Assembly (NCBI GenBank): GCA_002269645.1
Contig: NIVC01003016.1
Coordinates: 61,201 to 125,200, forward strand
Direction: 5' to 3'
Length of the DNA: 64,000 bases
Source: Macrostomum lignano
Taxonomy: Eukaryota
Made by a program: the position numbers and the translations under genes. Position 1 is the stretch's first letter. Every line of letters begins with the position of its first letter. This document shows, piece by piece, positions 2,966-42,545 of this stretch. The notes below the pieces were generated by a model. That model searched no databases. It was not told where the DNA came from and worked only from the letters and a program-made list of their open reading frames with translations.

Positions 2966-3721
2966 TCAGGTGACTTTAGGACCCGTATAGTCAACGGTGC
3001 CGCAGACGAAGTCCCTGGGTTGGGGAATTTCTAGCAGGTAGACGTGCTTAGACTGTTGCTCGTCATCAGCTGACAGATGCTGCCGATTCTGTTCCTCGCT
3101 GTTAGGCAAGGCCACTTCCCGGTAGTAGCGGCAGACCCGCTGGCCCAAGTCGTGATCGTACGGCGGCGCCAGGATGTCAATAAAAGCCGCTCCGTCGCCC
3201 AGTGCCTGCAGCTCGTGATAGCCGCCCTCAGACGGGGTCAGCAGGAGCGGCTGTGAGGCAGAGGTGAACACGCCGTCAGTAGACAGGGTGACGGCAGTCA
3301 GCTCGGGCAGCTGCCATCGAGGCAACAGACGAGCGGCCAGAGCGGCTTTGGCGGCTGCGGCGGCCGAGGCGGAGGCTGGCGAATAGGCGCGACAGCGCAG
3401 ACTGCCGTGGATGAGGCGGCACAGGCCGAACATGTCCGGATGATCGTGCAGCGGGATCCGGGCGCCGGGGCGCAGAACAAATATGCCCATAGACAGTGCG
3501 GCATTCTCAACTATGTGCAGATAGAGCACAGGCGGCGAGTGAGTGCCACTGGCGTCCGTGACGAGGCGGGTGTCAAAGTCCACATCCTTGGTGCCGACAT
3601 TCGACAGCAGCTGCAGCAGGCGGGCGAGGCCGTCCTTGCTGACGCTTGACGCGCCCTGCTCAGTGACGGACGAAAATAATTGATAGGCAGCATTGGCAAC
3701 AGCTGCTATGCGGGTGGTCAT
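2966..3721 (-). CDS. ADO: 2-aminoethanethiol (cysteamine) dioxygenase, PCO/ADO cupin family, single coding exon, 251 aa
   Basis: Family motifs SMGIFVLRPGARIPLHDHPDMFG (HxH metal site), FIDILAPPYD, CRYY and C-terminal FVCGTVDYTGP. Confidence 0.93.
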   Translation of the reverse strand: MTTRIAAVANAAYQLFSSVTEQGASSVSKDGLARLLQLLSNVGTKDVDFDTRLVTDASGTHSPPVLYLHIVENAALSMGIFVLRPGARIPLHDHPDMFGLCRLIHGSLRCRAYSPASASAAAAAKAALAARLLPRWQLPELTAVTLSTDGVFTSASQPLLLTPSEGGYHELQALGDGAAFIDILAPPYDHDLGQRVCRYYREVALPNSEEQNRQHLSADDEQQSKHVYLLEIPQPRDFVCGTVDYTGPKVT

Positions 3722-5109
3722 GCCTCAATAGGATAAGTGACACTTATTATTAGTGTATTGTGCCAAGCAGCCTTGAGGTTATTTGAGTCGTCACCAGTGC
3801 AGCTAAGAACACTGCCTAGCAGAAGAATGCATGAGATTTACAATTAAGCACTGATTTAGCTATATAGAATTAGCCATAAAAGTTCTAGTAAAGTCAGCAT
3901 GAAAGGGCCAGTCAGCATAAGCTCATAAAGTGGAGCCCCCTAGTAACCTATGTACACAAATAATATGTCATTCTGCTGACAGTGACACCAGGAAGCTAGA
4001 TTTGGCAAAAAACTTAGGTTAAGTCCCTATTCCCTAATTATCTCTATTTTTGTTTGTTAAAAATGGTTTATAATTTTTTAAACCTTTCTTAATATAAAAA
4101 AACTTTTATACCTTATTATATAAAAAGTAGCAATTTTAATAGGAAATTATATAATTTTATTTATTTATTATTTTGATCTTGACTTTAGCAATTGCTTGAC
4201 ATAGCATATATGTCAATAAAATAAAATAAAATAAAAATTAGCATACTATTATATTATTTAATACTAATATAAATTTTTCAAAGCCACTTTTTATTCCAAT
4301 ATAGACTTATTAGACTTCATATATTTAAAACTATGGCCTGTCACAACTCCAAGATAGTCTAGGCCTATCTAAGCCTTTTATGGCTAAAAATAAATAAACC
4401 TAGCTATAAATATGAGGCCTAACTATCTTAATTATAGCCAATGGGGCAGATGATGCAGAAATCAAGGAACTTAAACCTTGGCGTGGCCCAGCCAGTTGGG
4501 AGGCCTAAAAGGGCTAGCTCCTTAGCAAAATCATACTGCAAGTTTTTGAGAAAATGTTTTGTTGTCTTTATATAGTTATTTAAATAATAACTGCATCAAA
4601 TGTCTTACTAAATTGTTCTTGCATTACCAAAGGCCAATCTATGCCAGATGCTATCTATGATAATAGCAATTAAATACAATAGGGGCCTATGGTTAATTAT
4701 TGTCTACTTTCCTAGCTTTATTTAATAACCATCTCTATTGGAATAAATTTAGAAAATTTGTAAACACATCAAAGGTCTAGTAAAAAATAAAAACATGCTA
4801 AGGGGTCACTCTCCAAGGTACATGGGCCATATCAAGGGGTCACCAAGAGTGCACTAGGCCTATGACTTGTGACATTGTAACAATAAAGGACCTTCCTGCA
4901 AAAGACCTTTTTAGCACTCTACATTGCTCTGACATTGCTAACAAAACAATATTGTTATAGTGTTATGCAAAACATGCTTAATAACTTTGTCAACTTTTGA
5001 TATTTTATCTATTTTATGAAATAGATGAATAAAAATAACAACATGCTCATTTTGACATAGATTCCAAGCACTATACCAAATGTTATATTGCAGTGTGCTT
5101 ATACATACA

Positions 5110-5405
5110 CAACAGTTAGCTGAGTCGGCCAATCCTGCCGACCAATTTGGTGGCCAACCAAGGAAGTTGCAAAAATTCCCACCCAAAAAAACCAAAGTAG
5201 TAGTACTAAGTAGCTGATGAGGCATTTTGACTTAATAAGACAATCATAGTTACTCCTGCCATTTACCCAAAGTTGCGTTAATTTTGCATTAGGGTCTTTT
5301 TTCATGTAAGTGGCATTTATGGCCAAAAACTATGTCACATTTTTGTTAAAACTAAGTTGCATGGCTGACCAAATTTTGGAGGTTGCGCATGTATGAGTGT
5401 GCTGC
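5110..5405. mobile_element. Dispersed repeat, CpG-decayed copy (family shared with 37409-37685)
   Basis: Colinear with 37409-37685 over ~290 bp (e.g. CCAACCAAGGAAGT..AAAGTAGTAGTACTAAGTAGCTGA..TTACCCAAAGTTGCGTTAATTTTG). Confidence 0.85.
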
Positions 5406-5609
5406 ACCAAATGCTAGGCCCCTTATCTCACTGAAAATGTGCTTGTGCTATATTGCAAGGTCATTTTGAAAATGTACCAGATAGTCTAACTATCTACTAT
5501 TTAACAACTTTTTTTAATAGGGATAATTATAAGATTTGGCATTTAGGCTTTATTAAGCTTTAATCTAAGGTAATTGTTATTTGTCTAATGACCTAACAAA
5601 TATGTTTTA

Positions 5610-5899
5610 GGCAATGGCTAGAGTTCCGACACCGGAGCCCGTTTTCTAGCGGCTACGGATCTGGCAATGCCATTATAATATAGATGGAACATTATATTTT
5701 TCTTTCTACAGGTGGCTGATATTGAGATTTTGTTCTAGATTAAAATTTAAGACAATATGATAAAATTCGGGACAAGATGCTTCTAATATTCAGACTTCTT
5801 AAGATATGTTCTTAGCAGTCTTTATATGCTTCTATATGGCACTGCCGGATCCCTAGCTGTTAGAAAACGGGTTCAGGTGCCGGAACTCTAGCCATTGCC
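5610..5899. mobile_element. Mutator-like MITE with ~65-bp TIRs and 9-bp TSD
   Basis: TIR GGCAATGGCTAGAGTTCCG... / ...CGGAACTCTAGCCATTGCC; identical flanking TATGTTTTA at 5601-5609 and 5900-5908. Confidence 0.88.
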
Positions 5900-6025
5900 T
5901 ATGTTTTAACTCTTAGTGACATATATTTGTTTACTAGGCCTAGTTACTAAAAAAATAATAATTGCCTTAATCTATTGCTTTGTTTGGTTTTAAACAAATT
6001 GTCAATAAATAAATAAAGTAAAAAT

Positions 6026-6865
6026 GGCATTCCTTCAGTTTACGATCATTGAAATTAGTGACGATCCCCATTGGAAAGATAGGGAAGATACAAAATTGTT
6101 GTTTATTTCATCAAAATGCAAAAAAAACAGTGTAGACAAGCATTCCAATCCTTTTTATTTATCCATCATAACACTAGCTGCTACATGTTCAAATGAAAAA
6201 AGAAGGTAAAGGGGTTATAGTGATTCATTTCACAGTTCCAAGAATCCAAAGATGATCCTATATATCCACTTTGGTTTACGATCATTTAAATGGAAGAGAT
6301 ACATGTAAATGATTGTGAACCAAAGCTAGCGTATGTGTGTAAGGGGGTTTTGGTGTTTTACAAGCTCTATCTGAAATTGATCACTATCTCATTACATGGC
6401 TAGCTTCGGTTCACGATCATTGACATATATTGCTTACATCTAAATGATCATAAACCGAAGCTGAGGGGGGGGGGTGGCAGTGTGCAGAGAATAATAAAGC
6501 ATCAAGTTACTTGGGAGCGCACGTTAACTCAAGATGACATTTCAATCGCCAACAAGCCACCAAATAAATATATGACTACATATGTCTTCGACACCCCCCT
6601 TAGCTTCGGTTCACGATCATTTACATGTATTGCTTCCGTTTAAATGATCGTAAACTGAAGTGGATATATAGGATCCTTGTCATCGCCATGCCATGAAAGA
6701 AACCATTTGTCGGCTATTCTGTTCAGTTTTTTTAATGTAACGAATAAGCTCAGTTTAACAATTTTTGTTTATTTCAAGCAAGCTATGATCATTTATATGA
6801 AAAATTACATGGGGATTGTGAACCGAAATATGGGTGGAAAAATGATTGTAAACCAAAGGAATGCC
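6026..6865. mobile_element. Foldback-type non-autonomous DNA transposon with long internal inverted arms and 8-bp TSD
   Basis: Termini GGCATTCC.../...GGAATGCC flanked by GTAAAAAT at 6018-6025 and 6866-6873; 6254-6330 is the reverse complement of 6600-6675; internal subrepeat GGTT(T/C)ACGATCATT. Confidence 0.82.
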
Positions 6866-9640
6866 GTAAAAATATAGGCCTTATAGCCAAAGAACCTAAC
6901 CAAAACATAAGAATCTATTTTTTAAGATTCAAGAAAAAAACTTTTTAGATAAAAAAACAAAATGTAAAAGACAAAAGTTTTTAAAATATATTAGGTCTAA
7001 TTAATTCTAATAGCACCAAGCAAGGAGATTATGTGCCAATTCAAAATGTTTTAAAGTGAAAAATCCATATTATAGGCCTAGGCCTAGGCCTAGTGCACTG
7101 CAACTGCTGGTGCTTCAAGTTTGGTAAATAGCTCACCATTTTTTGTTTTCTAAGAACTAGGGTAATCAAATAGTCTCTGACTCTGACTCTATAAAAAGAT
7201 GGCCTTTTCATTTCATCATTTTATCTATTCATTACCATTAACACTTATTTTTATATACTACAGTAAGTAAGCCCTCATCAAGTAGGTCTAAAATTTAGAA
7301 TAGACAAGCGCCCACATGGGCAGCCAGGATTTATTTTCGTGGGAGCGGGAGGCAGGGATGGGAGCGGCAGGCAGGGATATCCTGGATGATAATATCCTGG
7401 ATATGAATCATATAAAAGGCCAAATACTCCTAGGCCTAACTGTTGAATAACTGTGTGAAGATAAAAAACATTTCCCCAAAAACTTGCAGTATAATTTCGA
7501 CGAGGAGCTGGCCCCCCTCAGGCCTCCCAACTGCCTGCGCCACGGCCACGCCAAGGTTTAAGTAAGTTCCTTTCAACGAGTTTCAAGATTTCTGCGTAGG
7601 GCCTAGGGCCTAGTAGAGTCATCATCTGCTGTGCTGCGCGATACGGAAAAATTGAATTAAATTTTTGAAAATAGGAGCAGCTGTAAAAAACAATTATGTT
7701 TATAAAAATTGAACTATTCGGTAGCACAACGTTTGAAAATCAGTAAAAACTCTGTTTTTCGAAATTTTAGATTTTTATTGTGTAGGCCTACTTGCTGTTA
7801 AAATTTAGGGCTTAATCGTTTCTTAATATAAGATTTGACGGCCTGTAACTCCATCCAGACACTTGAACACTTATCACTTGTCAGCATCGGTTTCACTGCA
7901 CTGGGTCGTAATTAAGTATGCTAGCTAGTTACTTACTTAGGCCCTTATATCTAATATAATATAGACCTGATTTTGATTTTAAAACAAACTAAATTAAGTA
8001 GCTACGCCCCTAGTTCTGACCGTCTAGGTGCCATGGGAAGTGGGGTGTCTGCTCTGCATAGCATAGCATCGCCATAGCCATAGGCCTGGCTACGCCTAGG
8101 CCTACCGCCTATTGGCTAATAGTACCTAGGCTAGGCCTATTGGCCTGCTGGCCTACATTTGTACTGTTTATAGCATGGCAATTTATTCTTGTAGGCCTAT
8201 ATAAAACCTTTATCAATTGGCATTGCATAGCATAGGCCTATGGTAATAGGCCTAGGGCTTCAGGCTACAGCTAAGCCTACCTTGAACCCTTTAGTTTTAC
8301 TATTTTATCAGGCCTACTAGGCCTATTTTAGCTCAATTTTGTTGCTAAGTTCAATGGCCCATGGCTGCCACCGCTGCCACCGCTATCTGTTCCCTATCCC
8401 CTCGAACGTCTTCTTCTATTTTGTATATGGATTCCAAAGGGGAAGTCTGAAAATCCCGCTGGTTGTCTATCTAGAGGAGAAAGAGATGGCCGAACATTAA
8501 AAACCAATTCTAATAAGAGAAATCTCCCACTTGGGTGGCACTTGCCATATATATAATAGAAATAAAATAATCCCAACAGGCCAAGAAGAAGTTAGGCCCT
8601 AACCTTAAGAGTTTAGGCAGAATTTTTTAATTTGCTAGCATAGCGGCGGACATTAAAAATATAGGTAGAAAGGTTAAAACTGGGAAAAGTTATTTTCCTA
8701 GATGCTTGTTGTTGAGAGATAAAGTTCGGTTCCTAAAGGTATTCTAGGTTTTGAATAGGCTGACTAATGCAATTTAGAAAGTCAGGATGACAGCGTCTTC
8801 ATTCACTAGTATAGAGTATAGTATAGTATATAGCCTAGGGTTTTTTATTAGCTTATTAGGTCTACTAAGATGCAAAACTATAATTTATAGGCCTATCCAA
8901 GGTCTAATTTGAAGATATAATTAAATAACATAGGCCTAATATCCTTAAATGGCTTAATTGCACAAAAAATAAACTTAGCAATAGCTACAACCTACAACTA
9001 AGGCTAAGGCAAAGCATAAACTATTTGGTTGTTTATCTTTTTATTAAAGCAAGTATAGGTATGATTATAAACAATTACTTTTAGGCCTAATAGTGGATTT
9101 AAGGAGAAAAGGCATATGTTTCCTATTAAGTTAGATTTTTTATTTGGAAAATGTATATTTATTATATAATAAATTATATTCTATTATATATAAAATATGA
9201 TAATATATACCCTTGCTGGCCTTATAATTTATATATTTTTTATACTTGGTTGATATATTAATTAGCAAGAGGCAACAGGGTTGCTAACTAATATTAGCAA
9301 CCCTGTCTTGTCATATATATATAATCTCCCTAATTTACATTAGCCATGCAACTTACTTTTTGACCAAAAATATGATTTACCTATGAAATAAACCTTAAAG
9401 TAGAAATTACTGTAAATTTGGATGAATAGCAAGAGTAACTAACTATTTTATTAAGCCAAAATGTCTTGGCATCTTATTAATACTACATCTATATTTTTAA
9501 GTGGGCATTTTTATGACTTCTCCTTGACCTTGGTCTATCACAATTTATAGTGGCTAGATCAGCCAGGTTGGCCTGCAATTGCGCATGTATAAACCCTATC
9601 ATTGCCACTAGGCTTTTTGTACATTTAGGATATGTTAAAA

Positions 9641-9810
9641 GGCTTGTGGCCTATTGGTTAAAGCATTAGACTCACAACTTGAAAGTTAGAAGGTTTGATT
9701 CCTTAATCCTTATTCTATTAGAACAATTTATATCCTTGAAAAAGACATTAAACTGTGTTGCTTCAGTTTACTTAGCTAGAAACTGAGCACTAGAATTAGT
9801 TAGGATAATT
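9641..9810 (+). mobile_element. tRNA-derived SINE family 1, heavily C>T/G>A mutated copy
   Basis: Aligns with copies at 25612-25838, 27072-27322 and 63112-63345: A box GTGGCCTATTGG, B box GGTTTGATTCC, central TCCTTGA..TTGCTTCAGTT. Confidence 0.7.
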
Positions 9811-10207
9811 GAAGGTATATATAGCAATATTAGTTTAGTCTAAGATTAAATAGCCATATGTAGGCTTTAGATACATAGTGCATATCTGTCCATTAGAGCA
9901 AGTATAATCTATTATCGTTATTGTTTAGGCCCTATTGCTAATGCTAATTTTTTGCTATATATTATTTCTTGTGCAAAAATCAATTTGGTCTTAAAATTAG
10001 GCCTAGGATGCCAGGTTGAAGTCCCCAATTATCTCTTGCTTGTTCTCTCTTATCTCAGGTGCAATTTTTTATTACTTTCTGCCAAATCCAGCTTCTTGGT
10101 GTCACTGTGAGTAGAATAAAGTATCATTTATATACATAGGTTACTTAGACTCTACTTTATGAGCTTAAGTTGACAGGCCCTTTATCAAACCTAATACAAT
10201 AATTTTT

Positions 10208-10556
10208 TTATTAGAAGCAGGGGTTGTATGCACCCTGGTGCACTTTAAGCAACATAGGCACACAACTGGCGAGAGGCATTACTGCCCCTTCTGCCAACTC
10301 CCTTGAGCAAGCATACAAACGCGTAGATACATACGCAGGCACTCACACAGGAGTATACAGCGGCCCAAACTTTATTTTAACGTTAGGAATGTACACTTCA
10401 CTGCACCTTGGGAGGTTGGCTTTCAAGGCCGTTAATTGTGCAAGCAGAGCCAAGCCAAGTTCCAATTCAGCCCCAAATTAATGTGACTGCACTTGGAATC
10501 GAGCCTAGGTCGCTGGCACATCAGAGCCTGCGCTAGACCACTGGGCTACAGCCCCT
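10208..10556 (-). mobile_element. tRNA-derived SINE family 2, copy A (mutated)
   Basis: Colinear with 12576-13209 and 49051-49345; minus-strand head with A box (TAGCCCAGTGG) and B box (GGCTCGATTCC). Confidence 0.8.
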
Positions 10557-11054
10557 TAATAATAATATAATAGTTATTATTATTTCATTTTTTATAATTT
10601 CATGTCACATTAAGTTATTTAGGTAGTCTTTATTTGTATCAATACAGGGAGAACAAAAAATGGAAGCCTGGTTAGCCCTAGTGCTAACTTAATGTAATAT
10701 AGATCAAAGCTATTCACAGATGTTATATATCAATCTATTGTTTAATATAGAGATAATATGAACCACACCACAAAAAATTATCACAAGCAATAAGCTTTTT
10801 ATAATCTTCATTTAATTTGGAGCAATTTTTATGGTTGTTAAAAAGTAAATGTACATACTTTGAGCATTTATTTTTTATTTCCTTTTGCTTTCCAGCCTAC
10901 TTGAATCACCATTGGATATGTAAAATTGGCCCTCATTCTAGGTTGAGCCAATCATTGCTTGTCTTTGTGCATTCCAAACTGAGACTAATCAATCATCTAA
11001 AAAATATTTTGCTGTATTCTATAGATTCGTTTTGAAATTTTCTAAGCAGTTTAA

Positions 11055-14000
11055 ATGACTGAAACCATAGAAGTGATGGCTGATGACCTATTGAACAATG
11101 ACTGCAATGTCACTCGTTCATCATCTAGAAAGGTGACCTTTCCTACTGACGAAAGTATTGTGTCTGGCTACATGGACCCACCAGATCCTTGGGGAAAGGG
11201 TAAGTACAAATTGGTGTATGAAAGAGAGACAGGGTTCTTAGGATTAGTCGTTATTAAAACTGTTAAATAAAAAAATGACGTGTTTAAAAGTTTCGTTGGA
11301 GAACCTTAAAAGGGCAGGTAAAGTGGGACACTGGTTTGGAATGTTTAGTAAAGTGCAACACCTGTTAAGAATATCAGATGAAGTGCGACACTGATTGAGA
11401 AAGCAGGTGAAATGAGACAAGCCGAGAATAATATGTTGACTGATGGAGTTGAGAAGGGTAAAGGAAGTGAGACACCGGTTGAGAAGGGTAAAAGAAGTGA
11501 AACACCCGTTGAGAAGGGTAGAGGAAGTGAAACACCGGTTGAGAAGGGTAGAGGAAGTGAGACACCGGTTGAGAAGGGTAAAGGAAGTGAGACACCGGTT
11601 GAGAAGGGTAGAGGAAGTGAGACCGGTTGAGAAGGGTAGAGGAAGTGAAACACCGGTTGAGAAGGGTAGAGGAAGTGAGACACCGGTTGAGAAGGGTAAA
11701 GGAAGTGAGACACCGGTTGAGAAGGGTAGAGGAAGTGAGACACCGGTTGAGAAGGGTAGAGGAAGTGAGACACCGGTTGAGAAGGGTAGAGGAAGTGAGA
11801 CACCGGTTGAGAAGGGTAGAGGAAGTGAGACACCGGTTGAGAAGGGTAGAGGAAGTGAGACACCGGTTGAGAAGGGTAGAGGAAGTGAGACACTGGTTAA
11901 GAAGGACAGGTAAATGAAGACACCAGCTAAATATTGATTATTCATAATATAACCATGCTGGGCATTGCAGGCTACAATTGCACTACGGAGGAGCTGGTGT
12001 GCGCCTACAAGGCTGCCTGCGACGCCAACGGAGTTCAGCCGCACCGGCACCTGCTTGAGCAGCTGCAGGGCATCGACCTGAGCGTCTGCAACGATCGCTA
12101 CGAGATGCTGAGCTGTCGCAATCTCCGGCTAGACAGCCGGCAGGTCGAAGCCCTGGAAGAGATTTTCAAACGGGTTCAGTTTAAAACGCTGGACTTTGAA
12201 AGCAGCGGCCTCGACGAAGACAGCGCCATCGCCCTGTTCGACATGATCGAGTACTACGAGTCCTGCTGCAAGCTCAACATCGCGCACAACACTAGAATCG
12301 GACTGCGCGGCTGGCAGATGTGCTCGAGAATGTTGAAGAAAACTCCGTGCCTACAGACCATTGATTTGCACGGCATCCCGCTGTCCGAGCAGAGCATCCC
12401 GGCCCTGGTTCGGTCGCTTCGGATTGGCTCCACTTTGGTTACGCTGCATTTGGAGCATTCGAATATTACTGGCCGGAATCTGCTCATACTCGGTTGGTTG
12501 CTGGGTCATTTATTTTATTTGTTTTATGGTATCGCATTCTACAGGTGTGTCCAAATGAGAGATTCGAAGTTCGGCTAGAGCGCACTTCAGGCGACATTGT
12601 CACACAACCGGCGAGAGGTATTACTGCCCATTCCGCCGACTCCCCTTAGCAGGCACACAAGCGCGCGGATACGTACGCAGTCATACGCACAGGCACACAC
12701 ACACAGGAGCGGGGGCATCACAAACCCAAGAAATCACAACTCTGAAAAGCGCTTTCCATCAAAAACCCGAAATATCATAAACCCGAAATATCATAACTCC
12801 GAAAGTTCTAGCAATGTCCAACACTATTTTAGTTTTCGAAGTTATGATATTTCGGGTTTGTGATATTTCGGGTTTATGATATTTCGGGTTTATGATGTTT
12901 CGGGTTTATGATATTTCGGGTTTATGATATTTCGGGTTTGTGATATTTCGGGTTTATGATATTTCGGGTTTATGATATTTCAGGTTTATGATATTTCGGG
13001 TTTCTGATGGCGACCCACACAGAAGTGTACAGCGGCCCTAACTTTATATTATCGTTAGGCATGTACACTTCACTGTGCCTTGGGGGTTGGCTCTCTAGGG
13101 TGTTAATTGCACGAGCAGAGCCAAGCCGAGATGCCAATTTAGCCTCAAATTAATGTGACTGCTCTGGGAATCGAGCCTGGGCCGCTGGCACATCTGAGCG
13201 TTGCCCCAGACCACTGGACAACGGCCCCCCGATGAAAATATTTTTTATTTTAATCAATAGTTTATTTTTAGCATAGAACCAGCCTTTAAATGTTTTCTAC
13301 CAAACAAACGTTTCCCGGCCTTCTATATTTATATCGTCCTTCGTTAATCGTTATGATCCTTATATGATCCCTAGCTTTTCTTAAATTTGTGTACTGAGTT
13401 ACCTCTGAATATATTAATAAATATCTATGCCAACCTATCCTCCTCAGTAACGGCCCTACGCATCAACGAGAGCCTTCGCGAGCTGCTGTTGGCCGACAAC
13501 AAGATGACCAGCAGCGATGGCCAGCACCTGGCCAGCTTGTTGAGAAACACGCCAACTCTGCAGATGCTGGACGTGCGGAACAATGCTCTGCAGGTGCGCT
13601 TGAATGACTTTGATAAGTTTAGAGGCCAAGCTTACAGGCGTAAACAGCTTGCTAATTGGTTCAGCCATGACTGGAACAACCGGGAAGGCAATAAACATTG
13701 GGTGGCGGGGCGGGGGGTTAAAAGCCAATAAATACGCCTCTGTCTTTAAAAATACATTAAAATGCTTCGGTTTAACTTACTACTGAACTGACAGTAGCTT
13801 GCGCGTATAAATTTGCTGCGTGGCCCATCTAGTTATATTCTAGTATCTGTGTTCAAGGCCGAGTTTTGATTTGAGCTGCCCCATTCAGCTTTGTACTAAG
13901 TACTAACCGCAGCCAACTCTGCTTAACTTGCATCGCTATTCTATACTCGTGTTGTCATAGCGACCCTTATAGATTCTATCTGACATTTATTTGACCTTCA

Positions 14001-17000
14001 TTTGGGCGTTTTATTTGACCTTCATTTAACCCCCTCGGGCAGGACACTGGCTGCGCGTACATCTGCGAGGGCCTGTACGAACAGCAGGGCGGCGAGTGCG
14101 GCCTGGCCGCGCTGGTGCTGTGGCACAACCAGATCAGCCACGAGGCCATGCCGGCGGTGTCCGCCGCCCTAGCCGTCAATCGGCATCTGCAAACGTTGAA
14201 CCTCGGGCACAATCTGATTGGCAGCGAGGGCGTCCACCTGCTGCGCGAAGGCCTATTACGTAATCGAACTCTGCTTAGACTCGGCCTCCAATGGTGCCGA
14301 ATCGCTTGCGAAGGCGCTGTAGCCTTGGCCGAATGCCTGGCCGAGAGTCCCCAGCTGCTCAGGCTGGACCTGCGCGACAATCAGATTCGAACTGCCGGTC
14401 TCATGGCGCTTAAATTGGCGCTTAGCGTTAATAAGAGTCTGACCAGGCTCGACCTGGACAAAGACATCAAGAAGGAACCCGTGAGTCTATTGCGCTACCC
14501 TAGAGAGTTGCTAAATTTTGGTAGTAGATTTCAGCTGACCTCATATAACCTCAATAGAGCTTTTTAAACCTTATTTGGCCCTTTTTGTCCCATCAGAATA
14601 GCGTAGGCGTTTGGCATATATTAGGTTAAAATAGACCTCGATGCTAAAAGAAAAGTCTAGGAGCTATATTAATAAAATAATATTCCAGGTACCCTGGCGC
14701 AGTACACACAAGCGTTCCATTACTGTACACAGCACGCACTCATACACACCAGGGGCGTCGCCATCGAGGGGGGGGACATGTCCTCCCCCCAGTAATATGG
14801 GGGGACATGCCAATGCTTTGCCCCTTTTGTGACCTGTTATGAAAATCAATAATGTTGCTTCAGGGCAGCAAAATATAGCGCCTGCGGCACTAAAGTGAGT
14901 GTCTGCGGCGCTAAAATGAGTGTCTGCGGTGCTAAAATGAGTGCCTGCGGCGCTAAAATGAGTGCTTTTTTACCTTAAGCCTAGTTGACCTCACTTAAAC
15001 CCTAATACCATAACGCGAATTCAACGCAGAGCATGAAGGACTACGCCGAGCAGCAAGGCGCCCTATTAGAAGCGATCGGCGCCCTGCTCCAGCGGAATCG
15101 AGCTCAGGCTCGCGACAAAGAGCTGCGCCAGCTGGACGAGCAGCAGCGCCTGATGGAGCGCGAAGAGGAGACCTCCAGCCAAGACTCGCTGCAACGGCCC
15201 CGCTTCGTGCCGCCGCAGCCTTCGCCCATAGCAACTGATGATGGCGACGCTTCAAACGACGATGGGGCGCCGTCTCGACCGGCGGACCTGTCGGTGTCCA
15301 CCGCCGAGGTTTCGGCTCCGTTTGCTTGCGTCACGTCGCCAACAGATCGAGTTCTGGGCGTTGAGGATATCGTTGTTGGATTTAACGCTGCCGCCGGCGC
15401 CAACGCGTCACTGCTGCTGGTGGCGCCTGCGGCAGCCACCAATTCCGACGGAGATGCCGGTGCCTCTGCATTGGTAAGTATCCTGTATTTGGAGTCTCGG
15501 ATTCTTGACGGAGGATGTCTCATTTTCTATTTAAAAGCCCGATACATGTTAGTGGATGTCGGATTCTTGGTGTTGGATGTCGGATTCATGTTGGTAGATG
15601 GATTCATGTTGGTGGATGTCGGATTCATGTTGGTGGATGTCGGATTCATGTTGGTGGATGTAGGATTCATGTTGGTGGATGTCGGATTCATGTTGGTGGG
15701 TGTCGGATTCATGTTGGTGGATGTCGGATTCATGTTGGTGGGTGTCGGATTCATGTTGGTGGATGTCGGATTCATGTTGGTGGGTGTCGGATTCATGTTG
15801 GTGGATGTCTGGTTCATGTTGGTGGATGTAGGATTCATGTTGGTGGATGTCGGATTCATGTTGGTGGGTGTCGGATTCATGTTGGTGGATGTCGGATTCA
15901 TGTTGGTGGGTGTCGAATTCATGTTGGTGGATGTCGGATTCATGTTGGTTGATGTCGAATTTATTTTGGTGGATGTCAGATTCGTGTTGGTGGATGTCGG
16001 ATTCATGTTGGTGGATGTCAGATTCGTGTTGGTGGATGTCGGATTCATGTTGGTGGATGTCGGATTCATGTTGGTGGATGTCGGATTCATGTTGGTTGAT
16101 GTCGAATTTATTTTGGTGGATGTCAGATTCGTGTTGGTGGATGTCGGATTCATGTTGGTGGATGTCGAATTTATTTTGGTGGATGTCGGATTCTCGGTGT
16201 TTGATGTCGGATTCATGTTGGTGGATGTCGGATTCGTGTTGGTGGATGTCGGATTCGTGTTGGTGGATGTCGGATTCGTGTTGGTGGATGTCGGATTCGT
16301 GTTAATGGATGTCGGATTCATGTTGGTGGATGTCGGATTCATGTTGGTGGGTGTCGAATTCATATTATGTGCTGAAAAAATATTAGCAATGGTTCTGGAA
16401 CAACCCTTAGCTACTGAAAATTTCAATTCTCGTTGATTGACTCTATCTTTGTATTTTACCTTTTTTAGGCAACCCCGCAAGACCCGCTTAGCAATGATCA
16501 ATTCGAAATCGGCTCAGTGGGTGATGCTGACCTGTCCAGCTTGAATACTCCTGAGTCTACCGCTCAGCTTCAGGATGAGTCCGCCGCCCAGCCTCATCAG
16601 GATGAGTCGACCGCCCAGCCTCATCAGGATGAGTTTACCGCTCAGCTTCAGGATGAGTCCGCCGCCCAGCCTCATCAGGATGAGTCTACCGCTCAGCTTC
16701 AGGATGAGTCCGCCGCCCAGCCTCATCAAGATGAGTCTATCGCCCAGCCTCATCAGGATGAGTCGACCGCCCAGCCTCATCAGGATGAGTTTACCGCTCA
16801 GCTTCAGGATGAGTCCGCCGCCCAGCCTCATCAGGATGAGTCTACCGCTCAGCTTCAGGATGAGTCCGCCGCCCAGCCTCATCAAGATGAGTCTATCGCC
16901 CAGCCTCATCAGGATGAGTCGACCGCCCAGCCTCATCAGGATGAGTTTACCGCTCAGCTTCAGGATAAGTCTATCGCCCAGCCTCATCAGGATGAGTCAA

Positions 17001-30310: not shown

Positions 30311-30374
30311 CCTGTCCTGTCCCCCAGCCAGCATCCAGTTCCGTTGCCCTACAATGTCTCCAGCATCCAACAGT

Positions 30375-37408: not shown

Positions 37409-37685
37409 AACAGTCGGCCGAGTCCGCCGATCCGGCCGACCGATTTGGCGGCCAACCAAGGAAGTCGCAAAAATGCCCACCCAAAAAATAACAAAGTAGT
37501 AGTACTAAGTAGCTGACGAGGCATTTTGGCTTAATAAGACAGTCATAGTTACTCCTGCCGTTTACCCAAAGTTGCGTTAATTTTGTTTTTTACATGTCGC
37601 ATTTTTGGTCAAAAACTATGTCGCATTTTTGTTAAAACTAAGTCACATGGCCGACCGAATTTCGGAGGTTGCGCATGCATGACAT
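37409..37685. mobile_element. Dispersed repeat, CpG-rich copy (family of 5110-5405)
   Basis: Colinear with 5110-5405 but retains CpGs. Confidence 0.85.
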
Positions 37686-39591
37686 GACTAATTTAATAGG
37701 TTGGTATGCCCAGCAAAAGACTTGTCCTAGAAAGTGTAATTTCTATATGCCTATGAAGTATTCCTATCCTCTGACCCTATTGTAGCCAATGGTCATTATT
37801 GCAAATAGCATCCATTGAAGATTGGCCCCTAGCAATGGTGTGGCATATAGCAGTTGGCACAGCACATGGCAATGGCATAGGGCAGGGGCACAGGGAAAAG
37901 AGTGCACAATTCACCAAATCACTGATCTTTGGGACTTGTGCTAGTACAGTCTAGTGCAGGAAAAGGAGGAGGCATCTAGCATAGTTCAGACTAAGGAATC
38001 TGAACTAGCATTGCACAATCCTAAGTTTGCCAATCCCAGGATTCTTGGGATTAGGATATCCTATACAGCCAGAATTAAAAAATCTTAGGATTCTTAGGAT
38101 TGGGATATTTTGGACTTTGCCAATCTTGGGATTAAAAAAGTTTCTAATTTTTGTTGATGCAATTTTAGTTTACAAAGCCATCTAATCTGATTTTAAAAGG
38201 CTTTCAGTAATAGAATTAGAAATAGAATAGAATTGGCAAAAATACGATCAAAATTGGTCAAGAATTGCAGTCTCTAGAGTGTTATGGACATACAAACCTT
38301 AGAGAGTTAGTATATTTGGATAAAATATACTTTTTGGCAAATAAGAAACTGTTAATAAGATCTGAATTGGTATATAATGTACATGTATAGGCTAGCATAA
38401 TTGACATGCTTATTATATGCCAATATTAGCTCAAGAAAATCATACTTGATTGTGATATAACCTAGAGAATAATAGCTTATAGAACTATGGCCTGAAGTAC
38501 TAATACCACCATTCCACCAGAGTAGAAAAGGATCAAACCTTACCTTCCTAGTTACCCAGTAAGGCACCTATCCTAAATAGAGAATCAGTAGCTTGGGTTA
38601 TGTTCCAATAGCAAGGTCCCATTGTTTTAACCCCAACTATGGCCAATACCAAGGAGTTTTAAAGGTAAGTCTAGGGATTACTTAAAATAGTTCTACCACC
38701 ACTCCTATGCTAAGCATCTAAAGGGTGTCTTAAAAGTTATAAAAATGGTATTTTGTATAGGGGGCTTCTGAAGTCTGATCTAGGCAAATCAAAATTGAAA
38801 ACCCTAGTTTTAGATAAGTTTGAGATAGAAGTTAAGTTTAAATTAACAATGATTTGACTCTTATTTGGCAAGCACTATGATCCAAAACAAAGCGAGATTA
38901 ACTTTTATTGCTTTTGGCTTTGTGTACAAGCTTTAGAATAATAGTTCTGTTAAGTTATATTATTAGTCTATAAGTACTATTGGATATAGATTATAGCACA
39001 TTATTATTACACCTTAATAAATCTCTTTACAAAGTTACAATCTCTTAACAGCTTCAGTTGTATTGTGTATTCCTGCAGCCCTATAGTAGTTTATTCATAT
39101 TCACTAGCTAGATAATTAGATCAAAGTAAGACAGCTGCATGGATTATGGTTTTTACCTATTTTGATTTCTGACAAGTATTGCAAGTTGCAGATACTACTA
39201 TTATTATTTGAGAATAAATGATTGAATAATTGCAAAGTGGGATTGAGATCTTGATAGTCAATCCTAGGTCCCTAGGATTTAGGCCTAATTGAAATACTAG
39301 GATTTAGAATCCTAGGATTTGGGTCTAATCTAACTTATAAGGATAGGATTCTATGATCCCAGGATTGTATTCCCTAGTTCTAACCTTGGCTTGGCTGTAA
39401 TAAAAGCCAAATGAAAGCTTAAGCATGCCTTTATTAGCCAAACATATTAGAAATTGGCAATAGCAAAGAGTTATTAAACTTTGTGAATTGGCCCATTAGC
39501 CTAGGCAATAGAATAGGATAGAATAGGATATATTCTACTGCATTTCTCTAGAACTAAAAAGTCAAATTATTAGACCTATAATGAGTTTTTT

Positions 39592-39789
39592 CCAGTAGCA
39601 CAACCAGAAATTTTTTGAGGGGGGGGGGCGGATTCTGGAAGGTAAAATCCCGGGAGGGGGGGGGCAGAGAGGTGGCTCTGTTTTTGGCGAAAATTCGCTT
39701 GGTCCCCCCTTCGATTTTTTTTGGGTCTCTGCCTAAGGGGGGGGGCGACCGCCCCCCCGGCCCCCCCTGGTTGCGGGTTGCGCCACTGG
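39592..39789. mobile_element. G/C-tract MITE with TIR CCAGT(G/A)GC(G/A)CAACC
   Basis: Left CCAGTAGCACAACC versus right GGTTGCGCCACTGG; T-rich flanks on both sides. Confidence 0.65.
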
Positions 39790-42029
39790 TTTTTTCTAAG
39801 AAAGCCATTCCTTTCAAAAGCGCAATAAGCCATTTCAATCAGAGGGTGAGAAAGGGTTTTGGTTAAACCAGAAATACTAAAAGAATAGGATCTGTCAACT
39901 TTTTTTTAGTTTTGGCATTCGTACTTGCCACCTTAGCTTGGCCAAACTGGTCCAAGACTCCAATTGGCTTGTTTGGAGGCGAAACGGTCCATGGACGAAA
40001 CGCCAAACGGTCTATGGGCGAAACAGTCTGTGGGCGAAATGGTCTAGGGGCGAAATGTATTCTACATGGCCGAAACGGTTTATGGGCAAACCGAGTCAAA
40101 ATGACAGTTCACCCAGTTACCCCTATGGGGCTATAAAGAGTAGAGTCGTGCCGCCACGAAAATAAAAAGTGGTTTCTAGGAAAACTTACAAATTAACTAA
40201 AATTTAAATCACTTTTATCAAAAAATAAAAACTAGCTGTCTTCGTTTTTATGAAACGTATAATAATTTTAAATACTTATCAGATAACTTTTTTTGCAATC
40301 AATAAGTGTTTCTAACAAAAATCTAAGAAAAAATATTTCAAATTCATAAAATTCAAAGTTTCTAAAGTTGGGAGCAGCAGCATCAAGATCAAGATGATTG
40401 TACTTAATGCAGCATATGAGCATGAGCAAGGTCTGCAAGGTCAAGGATGCAGCGTAAATTGATAAAGGAGGTCAGGTCCATTAATCTAATCATAATATAC
40501 TGCATCTCCAATTAGTTACTATTATTAATGAACCTAATTAGCATTTTAGATGTGTCAAATGAAAGCTGAACTTCAAATTATTTCCTATGCCTAATATTAA
40601 ACTCTTACACGTCCTAAAATATTATTAAATCAAAATAAATATTAAAATGCTAAAATTAAGAAATAATGTTTAAAATAGTAGGCAGTGATTATTCCCACAG
40701 TACTGTGCCAATAATGACAATATTATGAATTATCCACATGTGCTATGCCAATAATTCTCTGGCTGGAGTGCTCTGCTTATTTTCATGGCAGCTAAATTAT
40801 AATACAATCTAATGGCTCTGGCCAAAGTCATCACATTGTGGCTTGGCTTTCAGTCACTCTGGCAACAAACAAGACAAACTAGTGACAGACAATCTAGCAA
40901 CAGTCAAAGTGCATGGTAACATATGACAATCTGACAATCTGTTTTGTTTATAGATTTTATGTATGGATTTTGAATTTTGCCACTTGCCAGATTGTCTTTT
41001 TGCTAACTGGATTGACTGGATACCTCATATTGTCAAGTGTTGTATTATGATTTAACATGTAAATTATTATTAGTTTATTTATTTATTAATAATATTAATA
41101 ATATTTATTAATAATAATATATTAAAAATTTTTATAACAGATAACACAACTATAATTGCATTATAATAAGTAAGTAAATGGTTTTACATTAGACCACCTG
41201 CTATAAGTTCATAACTAACTATACCTAGTTCAAAATGATTTAAAGAGCAATTAATTAAGAAATAATATTTTTTTAGAAAACTTGAAAATCCTTTTTATCA
41301 TATAGCAAAAATCTAATATCTTAAGAAAAAACCTAGTGTGTAGCAAATAAAAATAAGATAAAAAGGATGGAACTATCACTATAGCCCTAGCTAGATAAAT
41401 AAATAGTTAGCTTTTCTTTGATCACTTATTTCTAACTTTGACCTCTGTTAACTGCTTATTGTTATCTTATTGGCTAAGCTAGATTTGGCTAGCCTTCTAA
41501 TCAAAGTTTTGCTAGTTTTGTGCATCATTTATATAATTAAGTAAATATTAGTTATAAACCAATTTTAGTTATAAACCATAGGCCTATAAATCCCATATTC
41601 AAAATCAAAAGGCTAAAAAGTATAACTATAAACCCTAAAAAGAGAAAATAAATTTTAATTGCTATATTAAATTTAAGTGATACTAATGACAAAATAAATA
41701 AAAAAGAATATACATTATACTTTTTTCAAAATGTTGGTTGCAAGTAATATAGCTTAGTTATTTTAGTACCTTTGCATGCTTGTTTGTATCCTTAATCAAA
41801 CTTTTACCTAGTGGTATCTTCATATCAATCATTCAAAATAAGCAATAATACTAAGCATCATCATTGATGCTAGGCCATAGTTCAGATTGTGTATTAGTGT
41901 ATACTAGGTCTAGTAGGAGAATAATAAAAAGAATCTTATTTTTATGCTAGGACAAAAAATGCATCTATGCTAAGATGTATGTTGATATATGCTAAAAAAG
42001 GCAAGTACCTTTGTTGTATATTAGGAAAT

Positions 42030-42545
42030 CTTGTCTGTCAGCTGATGGAGTCAGATGTCTGTCAGCTGATGGGGTCAGATGTCTGTCAGCTGATGGGGTC
42101 AGATGTCTGTCAGCTGATGGGGTCAGATGCGTGTCGATGGGGTCAGATGTCTGTATCAGCTGATGGGGTCAGATGTGTGTCAATTGATGGGGTCAGATGT
42201 CTGTCAGCTGATGGGGTCAGATGTCTGTCAGCTGATGGGGTCAGATGTCTGTCAGCTGATGGGGTCAGATGTCTGTCAGCTGATGGGGTCAGATGTGTGT
42301 CAATGAGGTCAGATGTCTGTATCAGCTGATGGGGTCAGATGTGTGTCAATTGATGGGGTCAGATGTCTGTCAGCTGATGGGGTCAGATGTCTGTCAGCTG
42401 ATGGGGTCAGATGTCTGTCAGCTGATGGGGTCAGATGTCTGTCAGCTGATGGGGTCAGATGTGTGTCAATGAGGTCAGATGTCTGTATCAGCTGATGGGG
42501 TCAGATGTGTGTCAATTGATGGGGTCAGATGTCTGTCAGCTGTTG
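42030..42545. repeat. Minisatellite, 24-bp unit GTCTGTCAGCTGATGGGGTCAGAT
   Basis: About 21 copies with a ~170-bp secondary period. Confidence 0.95.

What the first reader, a model, noticed from the sequence alone, without database searches (positions are those of the whole stretch)
3790..11040. Block-restricted, RIP-like C:G>T:A hypermutation between the divergent ADO and PPP1R37 genes
Seen: long stretches have almost no CpG (by eye about 1 in 3791-5120 and about 3 in 8700-10200) and abundant CTAG and TAGGCCTA, the products of CCGG and CGGGCCCG when CG becomes TA. Repeat copies inside the block differ from copies outside mostly by transitions. SINE1 at 9641 versus 63112/27072: TCGG>TTAG, TGTGT>TATAT, TTCACCCAG>TTTACTTAG. 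SINE2 at 10208 versus 49051: GCGGATACGT>GTAGATACAT, GTGTAC>GTATAC. Element 5110 versus 37409: nearly every CpG changed. The equally AT-rich 34.2-36.3 kb region and the PPP1R37 introns keep CpG, so AT content alone or simple gene-body methylation does not explain it. Established: 5mC deamination gives CG>TG/CA; stepwise CpA>TpA is the fungal RIP signature and needs non-CpG targeting. Inference: a localized germline process (dense CpG plus CpA methylation, or a deaminase) acts on 5' intergenic/outron domains. I do not know of this being described in an animal. Insertion age is a confounder.
Basis: partly seen in the sequence, partly recalled or inferred. Interest (0 to 1): 0.85.

Follow-up and report, generated by a model that had tools for sequence, protein, structure and literature searches.

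The report
CpG-methylation decay in flatworm intergenic DNA
The CpG-free, AT-rich blocks between two Macrostomum lignano genes are real, but they look like the ordinary mutational scar of germline CpG methylation on old transposon-rich intergenic DNA, not a fungal-type RIP process, and the striking TAGGCCTA motif comes from recurrent 6-bp insertions/deletions at TA sites (probably transposon excision footprints).

Summary
The window is the last 64 kb of contig NIVC01003016.1 of the flatworm Macrostomum lignano, which keeps DNMT1 and DNMT3.

**Observation: confirmed.**
- 3791-5120 has 1 CpG where 32 are expected. 8700-10200 has 4 where 35 are expected.
- Similar blocks lie at 37.7-39.6 kb and 40.6-42.1 kb.
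- Repeat copies inside the blocks differ from outside copies mostly by C:G>T:A transitions.

**Mechanism.** Comparison with two homeologous contigs shows domain-restricted CpG hypermutability.
- 24-53% of CpG C/G positions differ in 5.1-7.2 kb and 10.3-11.0 kb.
- Only 1-4% differ in ADO, the downstream LRR gene, the upstream flank and a 7.2-8.3 kb island (odds ratio 30, p = 6e-18).
- Polarised recent changes give 10 CpG>TpG/CpA inside the domain and 0 at 331 CpG positions outside, at equal transversion counts (14 each).

This is the footprint of germline CpG methylation combined with AT-biased neutral decay.

**RIP criteria: not met.**
- The composite RIP index is negative.
- A linked 85%-identical copy is unmutated.
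- There are no strand-coordinated runs and no 5'-neighbour preference.
- CpA>TpA is about 2-2.6-fold favoured over CpT and CpC. That excess is modest and not shown to be block-specific.

**TAGGCCTA is not a CG>TA product.** Six of 16 homeolog indels are TA versus TA+GG(G)CC(C)+TA, next to mobile MITEs with GGGCC...GGCCC ends.

The parts
2966..3721 (-). ADO (PCO_ADO family) single-exon CDS. This is the left boundary gene, and its CpGs are not hypermutable.
   Evidence: Exact protein found on three M. lignano contigs with Pfam PF07847. 1 CpG transition at 135 CpG C/G positions against homeolog L002.
3790..5126 (.). CpG-free AT-rich block A: old, decayed intergenic DNA.
   Evidence: 1 CpG against 32 expected. 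GC 0.31, CpG o/e 0.03, GpC o/e 1.9, TpA o/e 1.05. The homeolog L002 is equally CpG-free.
5098..5396 (+). MITE copy at the block edge, partly decayed.
   Evidence: 85% identical to 37396-37682. 19 ancestral CpGs reduced to 4. 20 C>T/G>A against 3 reverse transitions.
5121..7173 (.). Zone of younger TE insertions that still carry CpGs, which are decaying fast. It includes a MITE at 5610-5899 with 9-bp TSD TATGTTTTA, and a MITE at 6026-6865 with 8-bp TSD GTAAAAAT.
   Evidence: Against L002, 16 CpG transitions and 25 conserved CpG dinucleotides. 24% of CpG C/G positions differ, against about 5% for other C contexts. ts:tv is 46:4. TIRs and TSDs were read from the sequence.
7174..8340 (.). Island inside the intergenic region whose CpGs are conserved, so it is inferred to be unmethylated. 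It has the highest density of TAGGCCTA.
   Evidence: 2 CpG transitions against 23 conserved CpG dinucleotides. GC 0.42-0.49.
7073..9090 (.). Cluster of TAGGCCTA / TAGGGCCTA / TAGGCCCTA motifs that are indel-polymorphic between homeologs. These are putative transposon excision footprints at TA sites.
   Evidence: Indels TA versus TA+GGCC+TA at 7429, 7783, 8094 and 9082. TA versus (TAGGGCC)x2+TA at 7597. The reverse case, present in L002, at 9174. None among 29 indels in other aligned regions.
8700..10270 (.). CpG-free AT-rich block B. It contains an old MITE copy (9346-9520, minus strand) and a decayed tRNA-derived SINE head (9641-9800).
   Evidence: 4 CpG against 35 expected. MITE copy: 19 C>T/G>A against 2 reverse transitions. 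Sub-threshold Rfam tRNA match at 9640-9711, 24.8 bits. SINE alignment.
10200..10568 (.). SINE2 copy, partly decayed, inside the CpG-hypermutable domain.
   Evidence: 79-83% identical to 49043-49346 and 13013-13241. In 10271-11040, 9 of 17 CpG C/G positions differ from L002.
10531..11028 (.). CpG-free block C, directly upstream of the first coding exon of the LRR gene.
   Evidence: 497-bp CpG-free gap; CpG o/e 0.09.
11055..14564 (+). This is the right boundary gene, and its CpGs are not hypermutable.
   Evidence: LRR_6 E = 1.6e-17 and ribonuclease-inhibitor structures E = 2e-34 for the concatenated open frames. 2 CpG transitions at 188 CpG C/G positions in 11925-13642.
37672..42130 (.). Second set of CpG-free AT-rich blocks (37672-39629 and 40610-42130), in another intergenic region between divergent genes.
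   Evidence: 3 CpG against 58 expected, and 1 against 31. 41126-42033 aligns to homeolog L004, which is also CpG-free. 66 ts and 37 tv; AT alleles 33:33.

Best explanation
The ADO / LRR-gene intergenic region of Macrostomum lignano is a pile of nested SINE and MITE insertions of different ages. It lies in a chromatin domain that is CpG-methylated in the germline.

**How the blocks arise.**
- Methylated CpGs deaminate to TpG/CpA about 7-20 times faster than other cytosines mutate.
- The genome's general GC>AT mutation bias then drives old, unconstrained sequence to about 30% GC.
- The oldest segments therefore end up CpG-free and AT-rich: these are the blocks.
- Young insertions (5.1-7.2 kb, 10.2-10.6 kb) still carry CpGs and are losing them now.
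- CpG>TpA double changes are two independent steps. The second step runs at the ordinary CpA>TpA rate, which is about 2-fold higher than for CpT or CpC. That excess could reflect DNMT3 side activity on CpA or a plain context effect.
- The flanking genes and a 7.2-8.3 kb island are unmethylated and keep their CpGs.

**TAGGCCTA is a separate phenomenon.** It arises by recurrent gain or loss of GG(G)CC(C)TA at TA dinucleotides. This is most likely the excision footprint of TA-inserting MITEs whose termini are GGGCC...GGCCC.

**Shown versus inferred.**
- Shown: the composition, the domain-restricted CpG hypermutability, the substitution spectra, the indels and the mobile MITE.
- Inferred: that the cause is 5mC, that it acts in the germline, and that the indels are footprints.
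For: **Organism and enzymes.**
- The ADO protein is found exactly on three contigs of GCA_002269645.1.
- UniRef and NCBI names give Macrostomum lignano.
- The literature states that M. lignano retains DNMT1 and DNMT3 and has low 5mC.

**CpG hypermutability is domain-restricted (window versus homeolog L002).**
- CpG C/G positions that differ by a transition: 16/66 in 5121-7173, 9/17 in 10271-11040, 2/2 in block B.
- Outside: 2/92 upstream, 1/135 in ADO, 2/188 in the LRR gene, 2/50 in 7174-8340.
- Pooled odds ratio 30, p = 6e-18.
- Further flanks give 10/308.

**Polarised recent changes, at 14 transversions in each set.**
- Inside the domain: 10 CpG>T, from the list after overlapping alignments were deduplicated by hand.
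- Outside the domain: 0 at 331 CpG positions.

**The blocks are old and at equilibrium.**
- 41126-42033 and its homeolog are both CpG-free, with AT alleles 33:33.

**Fate of ancestral CpGs in in-block repeat copies.**
- 22 became TpG or CpA, 5 became TpA and 4 were retained.
- That is, 5 of 27 decayed CpGs (18.5%) reached TpA, which is close to the clean CpA>TpA fraction of 25/101. This fits stepwise, independent events.

**TAGGCCTA.**
- 6 of 16 indels of 3 bp or more are TA versus TA+GG(G)CC(C)+TA. None of 29 indels elsewhere is of this type.
- A 267-bp MITE with TIR GGGCCTTTTCATATT is present at a TA site in L002, absent from the window at 7173, and nested in an L003 insertion.
Against: - No methylation data were available, so 5mC is inferred from mutation patterns only.
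- The published methylome paper (Wasik 2015) could not be read.
- CpG o/e of 0.03-0.1 is lower than in vertebrates. By my rough equilibrium estimate it requires a hypermutability factor of about 10-30.
- In the blocks, CpA/TpG o/e (about 1.0-1.16) is not raised and TpA o/e (1.03-1.18) exceeds the unmethylated AT-rich control (0.91). This hints at an extra CpA>TpA flux that plain CpG methylation does not predict.
- Sample sizes for non-CpG contexts are small (tens of events).
- The homeolog comparisons are unpolarised.
- Divergence varies widely, from 1.5% to 15%, which suggests gene conversion.
- For the footprint idea, the direction of the indels is unknown.
- The two MITE copies do not show a clean TA target-site duplication on both sides.
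- No transposase partner was identified.
Confidence: 0.72

Rival explanations
1. RIP-like or deaminase-driven hypermutation. A germline process converts C to T in CpG and CpA contexts across defined blocks, by analogy with fungal repeat-induced point mutation or with AID/APOBEC editing.
For: - Strongly asymmetric C:G>T:A changes in in-block repeat copies.
- CpA>TpA is favoured 2-2.6-fold over CpT and CpC (32/101 against 24/160, p = 0.002). It makes up 11 of 16 polarised non-CpG C>T changes.
- TpA/ApT is 1.04-1.19 in four of the five blocks and 0.91 in block C.
- TpA o/e is raised in the blocks and CpA/TpG o/e is not raised, relative to the unmethylated AT-rich control.
Against: - Composite RIP index is negative in all blocks, and (CpA+TpG)/(ApC+GpT) is 1.22-1.59.
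- CpG, not CpA, is the top target.
- A linked 85%-identical copy (37396-37682) keeps 19 CpGs.
- Unique sequence is affected as much as repeats.
- C>T and G>A are interspersed without strand-coordinated runs in three of four alignments; the shortest gives P = 0.04, uncorrected.
- There is no 5'-neighbour preference (0.17-0.28 for all four bases).
- In the 41-42 kb block, transitions are similar at CpA, CpT and CpC, and the two homeologs are compositionally at equilibrium.
- A milder CpA preference is also seen outside the domain.
Confidence: 0.08
2. An extension of the main explanation. The domain carries dense CpG methylation plus appreciable non-CpG (CpA) methylation by DNMT3 in germ cells. 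This adds a domain-specific CpA>TpA deamination flux.
For: - The CpA preference among non-CpG C>T in in-block copies.
- The compositional shift from CpA/TpG to TpA relative to the unmethylated AT-rich control.
- Relative to 14 transversions in each set, CpA>T is 11 inside the domain and 6 outside.
- DNMT3 is retained in M. lignano.
- From my own knowledge: animal DNMT3 enzymes prefer CpA among non-CpG sites.
Against: - The inside-versus-outside difference (11:14 against 6:14) is small and was not tested for significance.
- In the unpolarised homeolog comparisons, C/T differences before T are raised as much as those before A.
- Tandem-array variants show no CpA preference, but that test is crude.
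Confidence: 0.25
3. No special process. The blocks are simply the oldest neutral DNA, and CpG loss plus AT-richness follow from age and the genome-wide mutation bias alone.
For: - In-block copies are old: they are shared by the homeologs and show 5-6% transversions.
- The 41-42 kb block is at compositional equilibrium.
- CpG content inside the region tracks insertion age.
Against: - CpGs outside the domain are not hypermutable: 0 of 331 positions in the polarised set, and 1-4% against 24-53% inside in the unpolarised comparison.
- An equally AT-rich 2.1-kb stretch keeps CpG o/e 0.95.
- Age alone therefore cannot remove CpGs selectively.
Confidence: 0.05
4. TAGGCCTA is a functional palindromic binding site, for example for a promoter or insulator factor, maintained by selection in the intergenic region.
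For: - It is a discrete 8-mer palindrome with no conserved flanks.
- It clusters in the inferred unmethylated island between two divergent genes.
Against: - The sites are gained or lost as whole 6-7-bp indels between homeologs. Substitutions also hit them: 24 of 136 motif positions differ, including indels.
- Length variants (TAGGGCCTA, TAGGCCCTA) and tandem copies occur.
- Only 3 copies occur in the other 56.7 kb, which holds several gene starts.
Confidence: 0.1

Closest known systems
Methylation-driven CpG depletion in mosaic animal methylomes (5mC deamination footprints, CpG o/e bimodality)
   Same: - CpG-specific hypermutability confined to a domain.
- CpG>TpG/CpA as the dominant change.
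- Neighbouring unmethylated sequence keeps its CpGs.
- The host retains DNMT1 and DNMT3.
   Different: - The depleted domains here are TE-rich intergenic DNA. The two gene bodies examined are spared, the reverse of the classical invertebrate gene-body pattern.
- Depletion is extreme (o/e 0.03-0.1).
- Methylation itself was not measured.
Fungal repeat-induced point mutation (RIP; RID/DIM-2 dependent)
   Same: - C:G>T:A transitions accumulate in repeated elements and leave AT-rich, TpA-enriched DNA.
- CpA is the favoured non-CpG context.
   Different: - No dependence on duplication.
- A linked duplicate is unmutated.
- CpG is preferred over CpA.
- The RIP composite index is negative.
- No strand-coordinated runs.
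- RIP is described as fungal-specific (PMC2621366, abstract listed).
AID/APOBEC editing of retroelements
   Same: G>A and C>T excess in mobile-element copies.
   Different: - No strand bias within copies.
- No TC, CC or WRC 5' context preference.
- Non-repeat sequence is equally affected.
Excision footprints of TA-inserting cut-and-paste transposons (Tc1/mariner, Stowaway-like MITEs)
   Same: - A palindromic insertion flanked by TA on both sides (TA + a few terminal bases from each inverted repeat + TA).
- Length variants of plus or minus 1 base.
- Clustering near resident elements whose termini (GGGCC...GGCCC) match the inserted bases.
   Different: - The MITE copies seen do not show a clean TA duplication on both sides.
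- No transposase or autonomous partner was identified.
- The direction of the indels is not polarised.
- The density (18 in 5.6 kb) is unusually high.

Membership tests
Fungal-type RIP | Mutation is triggered by sequence duplication, and both (especially linked) copies are hit. | tested here: not met
   The copy at 37396-37682 is 85% identical, lies 32 kb away on the same contig, and retains 19 CpGs. The copy at 5098-5396 retains 4. Non-repeated block sequence is equally CpG-free.
Fungal-type RIP | Dinucleotide indices: TpA/ApT > 0.89, (CpA+TpG)/(ApC+GpT) < 1.03, and composite index > 0. | tested here: not met
   TpA/ApT is 0.91-1.19 (met). The substrate index is 1.22-1.59, and the composite index is -0.03 to -0.68 in all blocks.
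Fungal-type RIP | CpA (Neurospora type) is the dominant target, with strand-coordinated C>T runs. | tested here: not met
   C>T per C site: CpG 0.45, CpA 0.32, CpC 0.18, CpT 0.13. The runs test is not significant in 3 of 4 alignments.
Fungal-type RIP | A RID-type cytosine methyltransferase homologue in the genome. | not tested
   The proteome was not searched; all three protein-search slots were used for other purposes.
AID/APOBEC-type editing | A 5'-neighbour motif (TC, CC or WRC) and strand-asymmetric clusters. | tested here: not met
   Non-CpG C>T by 5' base: A 0.21, C 0.25, G 0.17, T 0.28. C>T and G>A are balanced: 10/10, 9/10 and 6/7.
Germline CpG methylation footprint (5mC deamination) | CpG transitions are elevated over other C transitions within the domain but not outside it. 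| tested here: met
   24-53% against about 5% inside, and 1-4% against 2-5% outside. Odds ratio 30, p = 6e-18. Polarised: 10 against 0.
Germline CpG methylation footprint (5mC deamination) | The organism has maintenance and de novo DNA methyltransferases. | tested here: met
   Literature only: DNMT1 and DNMT3 are conserved in M. lignano and 5mC is low (PMC11292947, PMC9246332, PMC10658182).
Germline CpG methylation footprint (5mC deamination) | The surviving CpGs of the domain are actually methylated in germ cells. | not testable with these tools
   No bisulfite or nanopore data are accessible here.
TA-target cut-and-paste transposon footprints | Empty-site versus footprint alleles: TA versus TA + terminal bases of both inverted repeats + TA. 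| tested here: met
   Window versus L002 at 7429, 7597 (two tandem units), 7783, 8094, 9082 and 9174. None in 29 control indels.
TA-target cut-and-paste transposon footprints | A mobile element with matching termini and a TA target-site duplication. | tested here: inconclusive
   A 267-bp MITE with TIR GGGCCTTTTCATATT is polymorphic at a TA site. Its flanks read TA|GGGCC...GGCCC|ATA. The second copy has TA on one side only.

The most novel reading that the evidence does not exclude
In a flatworm that kept DNMT1 and DNMT3, germline methylation is directed at TE-rich intergenic domains rather than gene bodies. It includes a non-CpG (CpA) component strong enough to leave its own mutational footprint (CpA>TpA). 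Methylated domains would then be driven to a CpG-free, TpA-rich end state. This would be an animal analogue, in outcome but not in mechanism, of RIP-type genome defence.
Probability: 0.2. Interest if true: 0.6.

Novelty: new member of a known kind. Interest (0 to 1): 0.35.

Why it matters
[quoted passage not shown] This locus gives a sequence-only prediction: M. lignano methylates TE-rich intergenic domains, spares the two gene bodies examined here, and contains sharply bounded unmethylated islands. That would also explain why global 5mC is reported as low, because the methylated domains have already lost nearly all their CpGs.

The prediction can be tested directly with existing bisulfite data or with nanopore reads.

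The homeolog-comparison method used here measures CpG-specific divergence between the subgenomes of a hidden polyploid. It could map historical germline methylation genome-wide without any wet-lab work.

The TAGGCCTA indels point to a very active TA-targeting MITE family with local hopping. That is useful for transposon biology and for transgenesis tools in this model organism.

The finding does not reveal a new mutational mechanism in animals.

Tried and rejected
**Searches and look-ups that gave nothing.**
1. I tried to fetch more M. lignano DNA in order to build family consensus sequences.
   - The exact look-ups of the 397-aa retroelement ORF and of UniRef protein P0001 found nothing on record.
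   - The homology search with the retroelement ORF at E <= 1e-40 returned nothing.
   - The search with the 48-aa first exon of the LRR gene returned no candidates.
2. Polarising window/L003 differences with L002 as outgroup gave only 8 events inside the region. That is too few.
3. Wasik et al. 2015 (PMC4603488), the only M. lignano bisulfite study cited, is not held.
4. A literature search for TAGGCCTA returned only unrelated primer or operator sequences.

**Tests with weak or negative results.**

5. Variants in tandem arrays were used as an unmethylated control spectrum. The test is crude: several arrays lose register and counts saturate. It showed no CpA preference, and I gave it little weight.
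6. Conservation of TAGGCCTA between homeologs, as a test for selection, showed no conservation.
7. The window stretch 7190-7432 looked like a third copy of the GGGCC MITE, but only its termini resemble that element. It is at most a related element.
8. ARAGORN found no tRNA genes. Rfam gives only a sub-threshold tRNA match for the SINE head.

**Explanations considered and rejected.**
- APOBEC-type editing.
- Pure age.
- A CGGGCCCG origin for TAGGCCTA.

Full report
**Origin of the window.**
- The ADO open reading frame (2966-3721, minus strand, Pfam PCO_ADO) is encoded identically on three contigs of assembly GCA_002269645.1.
- UniRef and NCBI names for the neighbouring dephospho-CoA-kinase gene identify the organism as Macrostomum lignano.
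- L001 equals the window. From the coordinates, the window is NIVC01003016.1:61201-125200.
- L003 (NIVC01000356.1) is 99-99.8% identical around ADO. L002 (NIVC01000282.1) differs by 1.5-4% in substitutions.
- L004, from the same contig as L003, is homologous to window 41-54 kb at 85-93% identity.
- These homeologous copies of a hidden polyploid genome provided most of the evidence.
- The literature held here says that M. lignano, unlike planarians and parasitic flatworms, keeps DNMT1 and DNMT3, has low 5mC, and that its genomic methylation pattern is undescribed.

- 3791-5120 has 1 CpG against 32 expected. 8700-10200 has 4 against 35.
- The equally AT-rich 34200-36300 has 52 against 55.
- More blocks exist outside the finding: 37672-39629 (3 against 58) and 40610-42130 (1 against 31). 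These lie in another intergenic region between divergent genes.
- In the blocks, CpG o/e is 0.03-0.11, GpC 1.4-2.0, TpA 1.03-1.18 and CpA/TpG 0.96-1.16.
- Repeat copies inside the blocks differ from outside copies mainly by C:G>T:A. The counts of C>T/G>A against reverse transitions are 20:3, 19:2 and 13:2.

**What drives it: CpG hypermutability confined to the domain.**
- Between the window and L002, the fraction of CpG C/G positions that differ by a transition is:
  - 16/66 in 5121-7173, 9/17 in 10271-11040 and 2/2 in block B;
  - 2/92 upstream of ADO, 1/135 in ADO, 2/188 in the LRR gene and 2/50 in 7174-8340.
- Pooled, the odds ratio is 30 and p = 6e-18. Extra flanking sequence gives 10/308.
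- In dinucleotide terms, 16 CpGs differ and 25 are conserved in 5121-7173. In 10271-11040, 10 differ and 4 are conserved. In 7174-8340, only 2 transitions occur against 23 conserved CpGs.
- Polarised recent changes:
  - Inside the domain, TE copies were compared between window and L002 with an out-of-block copy as outgroup. After removing duplicates by hand from overlapping alignments, the counts are 10 CpG>T, 11 CpA>T, 4 CpT>T, 1 CpC>T, 3 T>C and 14 transversions.
  - Outside the domain (window or L001 versus L003, with L002 as outgroup), the counts are 0 CpG>T at 331 positions, 6 CpA>T, 4 CpT>T, 2 CpC>T, 11 T>C and 14 transversions.
- Selective, ongoing, domain-restricted loss of CpG is the classical footprint of germline cytosine methylation. 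Methylation itself is inferred, not measured.

**The blocks are the old end state.**
- 41126-42033 and its L004 homeolog are both CpG-free. They differ by 66 transitions and 37 transversions, and the AT allele is split 33:33. The sequence is therefore at compositional equilibrium.
- Transitions per C site are 31% before A, 25% before T and 17% before C.
- Within the ADO-LRR intergenic region, CpG content tracks insertion age. The young MITEs (5610-5899 with a 9-bp duplication, 6026-6865 with an 8-bp duplication, read) still have CpGs. The old SINE head (9641-9800, sub-threshold tRNA match) and the MITE copy at 9346-9520 have none.
It operates inside a domain where CpGs decay fast.

**Is there a RIP-like, non-CpG component?**
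- Taking out-of-block copies as ancestral, C>T per C site in in-block copies is CpG 33/73, CpA 32/101, CpT 10/80 and CpC 14/80. G/C transversions are 5.1%, A/T transitions 3.6% and A/T transversions 6.2%.
- CpA against CpT plus CpC gives an odds ratio of 2.6, p = 0.002.
- Counting only CpA sites that became TpA (setting aside the 4 that became TpG, possible parallel CpG decay, and 3 that became TT) leaves 25/101.
- Of 36 ancestral CpGs, 22 became TpG or CpA, 5 became TpA and 4 survive. So 18.5% of the 27 decayed CpGs reached TpA, against 25% for clean CpA>TpA. This fits two independent steps.
A roughly 2-fold CpA preference exists.
- Every defining property of RIP nevertheless fails:
  - the composite index is negative in all blocks;
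  - CpG is hit more than CpA;
  - a linked 85%-identical copy is untouched;
  - non-repeated sequence is equally affected;
  - there are no strand-coordinated runs in three of four alignments.
- APOBEC-type 5' context is absent.
- A milder CpA preference also appears outside the domain (6/413 against 6/653).
- In the unpolarised comparisons, differences before T are raised as much as those before A.
- Block specificity of the CpA effect therefore remains unproven.
- The compositional shift from CpA/TpG to TpA, relative to the unmethylated control, keeps open a modest DNMT3-type CpA methylation component. I put this at about 0.25.

**TAGGCCTA is a different story.**
- It is a discrete 8-mer palindrome with no conserved flanks. 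There are 18 copies in 4360-9998, against 0.29 (Markov-1) or 2.7 (Markov-3) expected.
- The precursor class YRGGCCYR occurs at 0.21 per kb in the rest of the window and at 2.8 per kb here. Conversion of CG or CA to TA therefore cannot produce it.
- Six of the 16 window/L002 indels of 3 bp or more in this region are exact TA versus TA+GGCC+TA, TA+GGGCC+TA (twice in tandem) or TA+GGCCC+TA events. None of 29 indels in other aligned regions is of this kind.
- L002 carries, at a TA site 27 bp from a related element in the window, a 267-bp MITE with inverted repeats GGGCCTTTTCATATT. The window lacks it. A 91%-identical copy is nested in an L003-specific insertion.
- A palindrome made of TA, two or three terminal bases from each inverted repeat, and TA is what excision of a TA-inserting cut-and-paste element leaves. 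This rests on my knowledge of Tc1/mariner footprints.
- I therefore read the motifs as excision footprints from local hopping, with moderate confidence (about 0.55).
- Caveats: the direction of the indels, the target-site duplication and the transposase are unresolved.
- The footprints cluster in the 7.2-8.3 kb island whose CpGs are conserved. This would fit preferential transposon access to open, unmethylated chromatin, but that is speculation.

**Verdict.**
- Observation: confirmed.
- Interpretation: partly supported. A localized germline process exists, but it behaves like ordinary CpG methylation decay on TE-rich intergenic DNA, with at most a modest CpA component.
- The RIP analogy and the TAGGCCTA derivation are not supported.
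- Novelty: a new member of a known kind. These are methylation footprints in a free-living flatworm whose methylome pattern is undescribed, apparently aimed at intergenic TE domains rather than gene bodies.
- Interest: moderate to low (0.35).

Noticed in passing
window 7429, 7597, 7783, 8094, 9082, 9174: The homeologs differ by exact TA versus TA+GG(G)CC(C)+TA indels. These make up 6 of the 16 indels of 3 bp or more in this region. They look like transposon excision footprints and account for the TAGGCCTA enrichment.
   Followed up: yes
window 7174-8340: An island in the middle of the CpG-hypermutable intergenic domain whose 23 CpGs are conserved between homeologs. It is inferred to be unmethylated and may be a promoter or regulatory region. 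It coincides with the densest TAGGCCTA cluster.
   Followed up: partly
L002:6293-6559 (minus strand; inserted at window position 7173) and L003:4838-5095: A 267-bp MITE with inverted repeats GGGCCTTTTCATATT. It is present in one homeolog, absent from the window, and nested in an L003-specific insertion. The family is therefore recently mobile.
   Followed up: partly
window 3902-4011 and 10076-10183: A 108-bp inverted repeat (82% identical, starting AAAGGGCC) brackets almost the whole intergenic region. It could be the two ends of one large old DNA transposon, or two solo MITE ends.
   Followed up: no
window 5610-5899 and 6026-6865: Two MITEs with GGC... termini. The first has 66-bp inverted repeats and a 9-bp duplication TATGTTTTA. 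The second has inverted repeats GGCATTCCTT... and an 8-bp duplication GTAAAAAT. Most of the decaying CpGs lie in them.
   Followed up: partly
L003 insertions at window positions 5597 (578 bp) and 7640 (1450 bp): TE insertions are polymorphic between near-identical copies. The 578-bp element has a 7-bp duplication ACCTAAC. The 1450-bp element has long subterminal GCGGAATAACGT-type repeats and a 10-bp duplication CTGCGCGATA, which is Mutator-like.
   Followed up: no
window 1-13700 versus 41000-54500, compared with contig NIVC01000356.1 (L003, L004): The same partner contig is 99-99.8% identical around ADO but only 85-93% identical at 41-54 kb. L002 is 96-98.5% identical at ADO but 83-87% identical just upstream. 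Homeolog divergence is a mosaic, which suggests gene conversion or recent segmental exchange.
   Followed up: no
window 52600-58800, minus strand: A degraded GC-rich retroelement. It has a 397-aa N-terminal ORF, reverse-transcriptase fragments (YIDD motif) and a weak C-terminal GIY-YIG match (E = 6e-4), which is Penelope-like. No homologue was found at E <= 1e-40.
   Followed up: partly
whole window (for example 1-914, 15541-17268, 21302-24684, 29156-30320, 44117-45140): Minisatellite arrays with 12-39-bp units are very abundant (69 TRF rows). Some of them produce long spurious ORFs and long CpG-free gaps that are unrelated to the AT-rich blocks.
   Followed up: no
window 37396-37682: A CpG-rich MITE copy (19 CpGs in 287 bp) sits directly against the CpG-free block that starts at 37672. 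It is either a very recent insertion or lies just outside the methylated domain.
   Followed up: no
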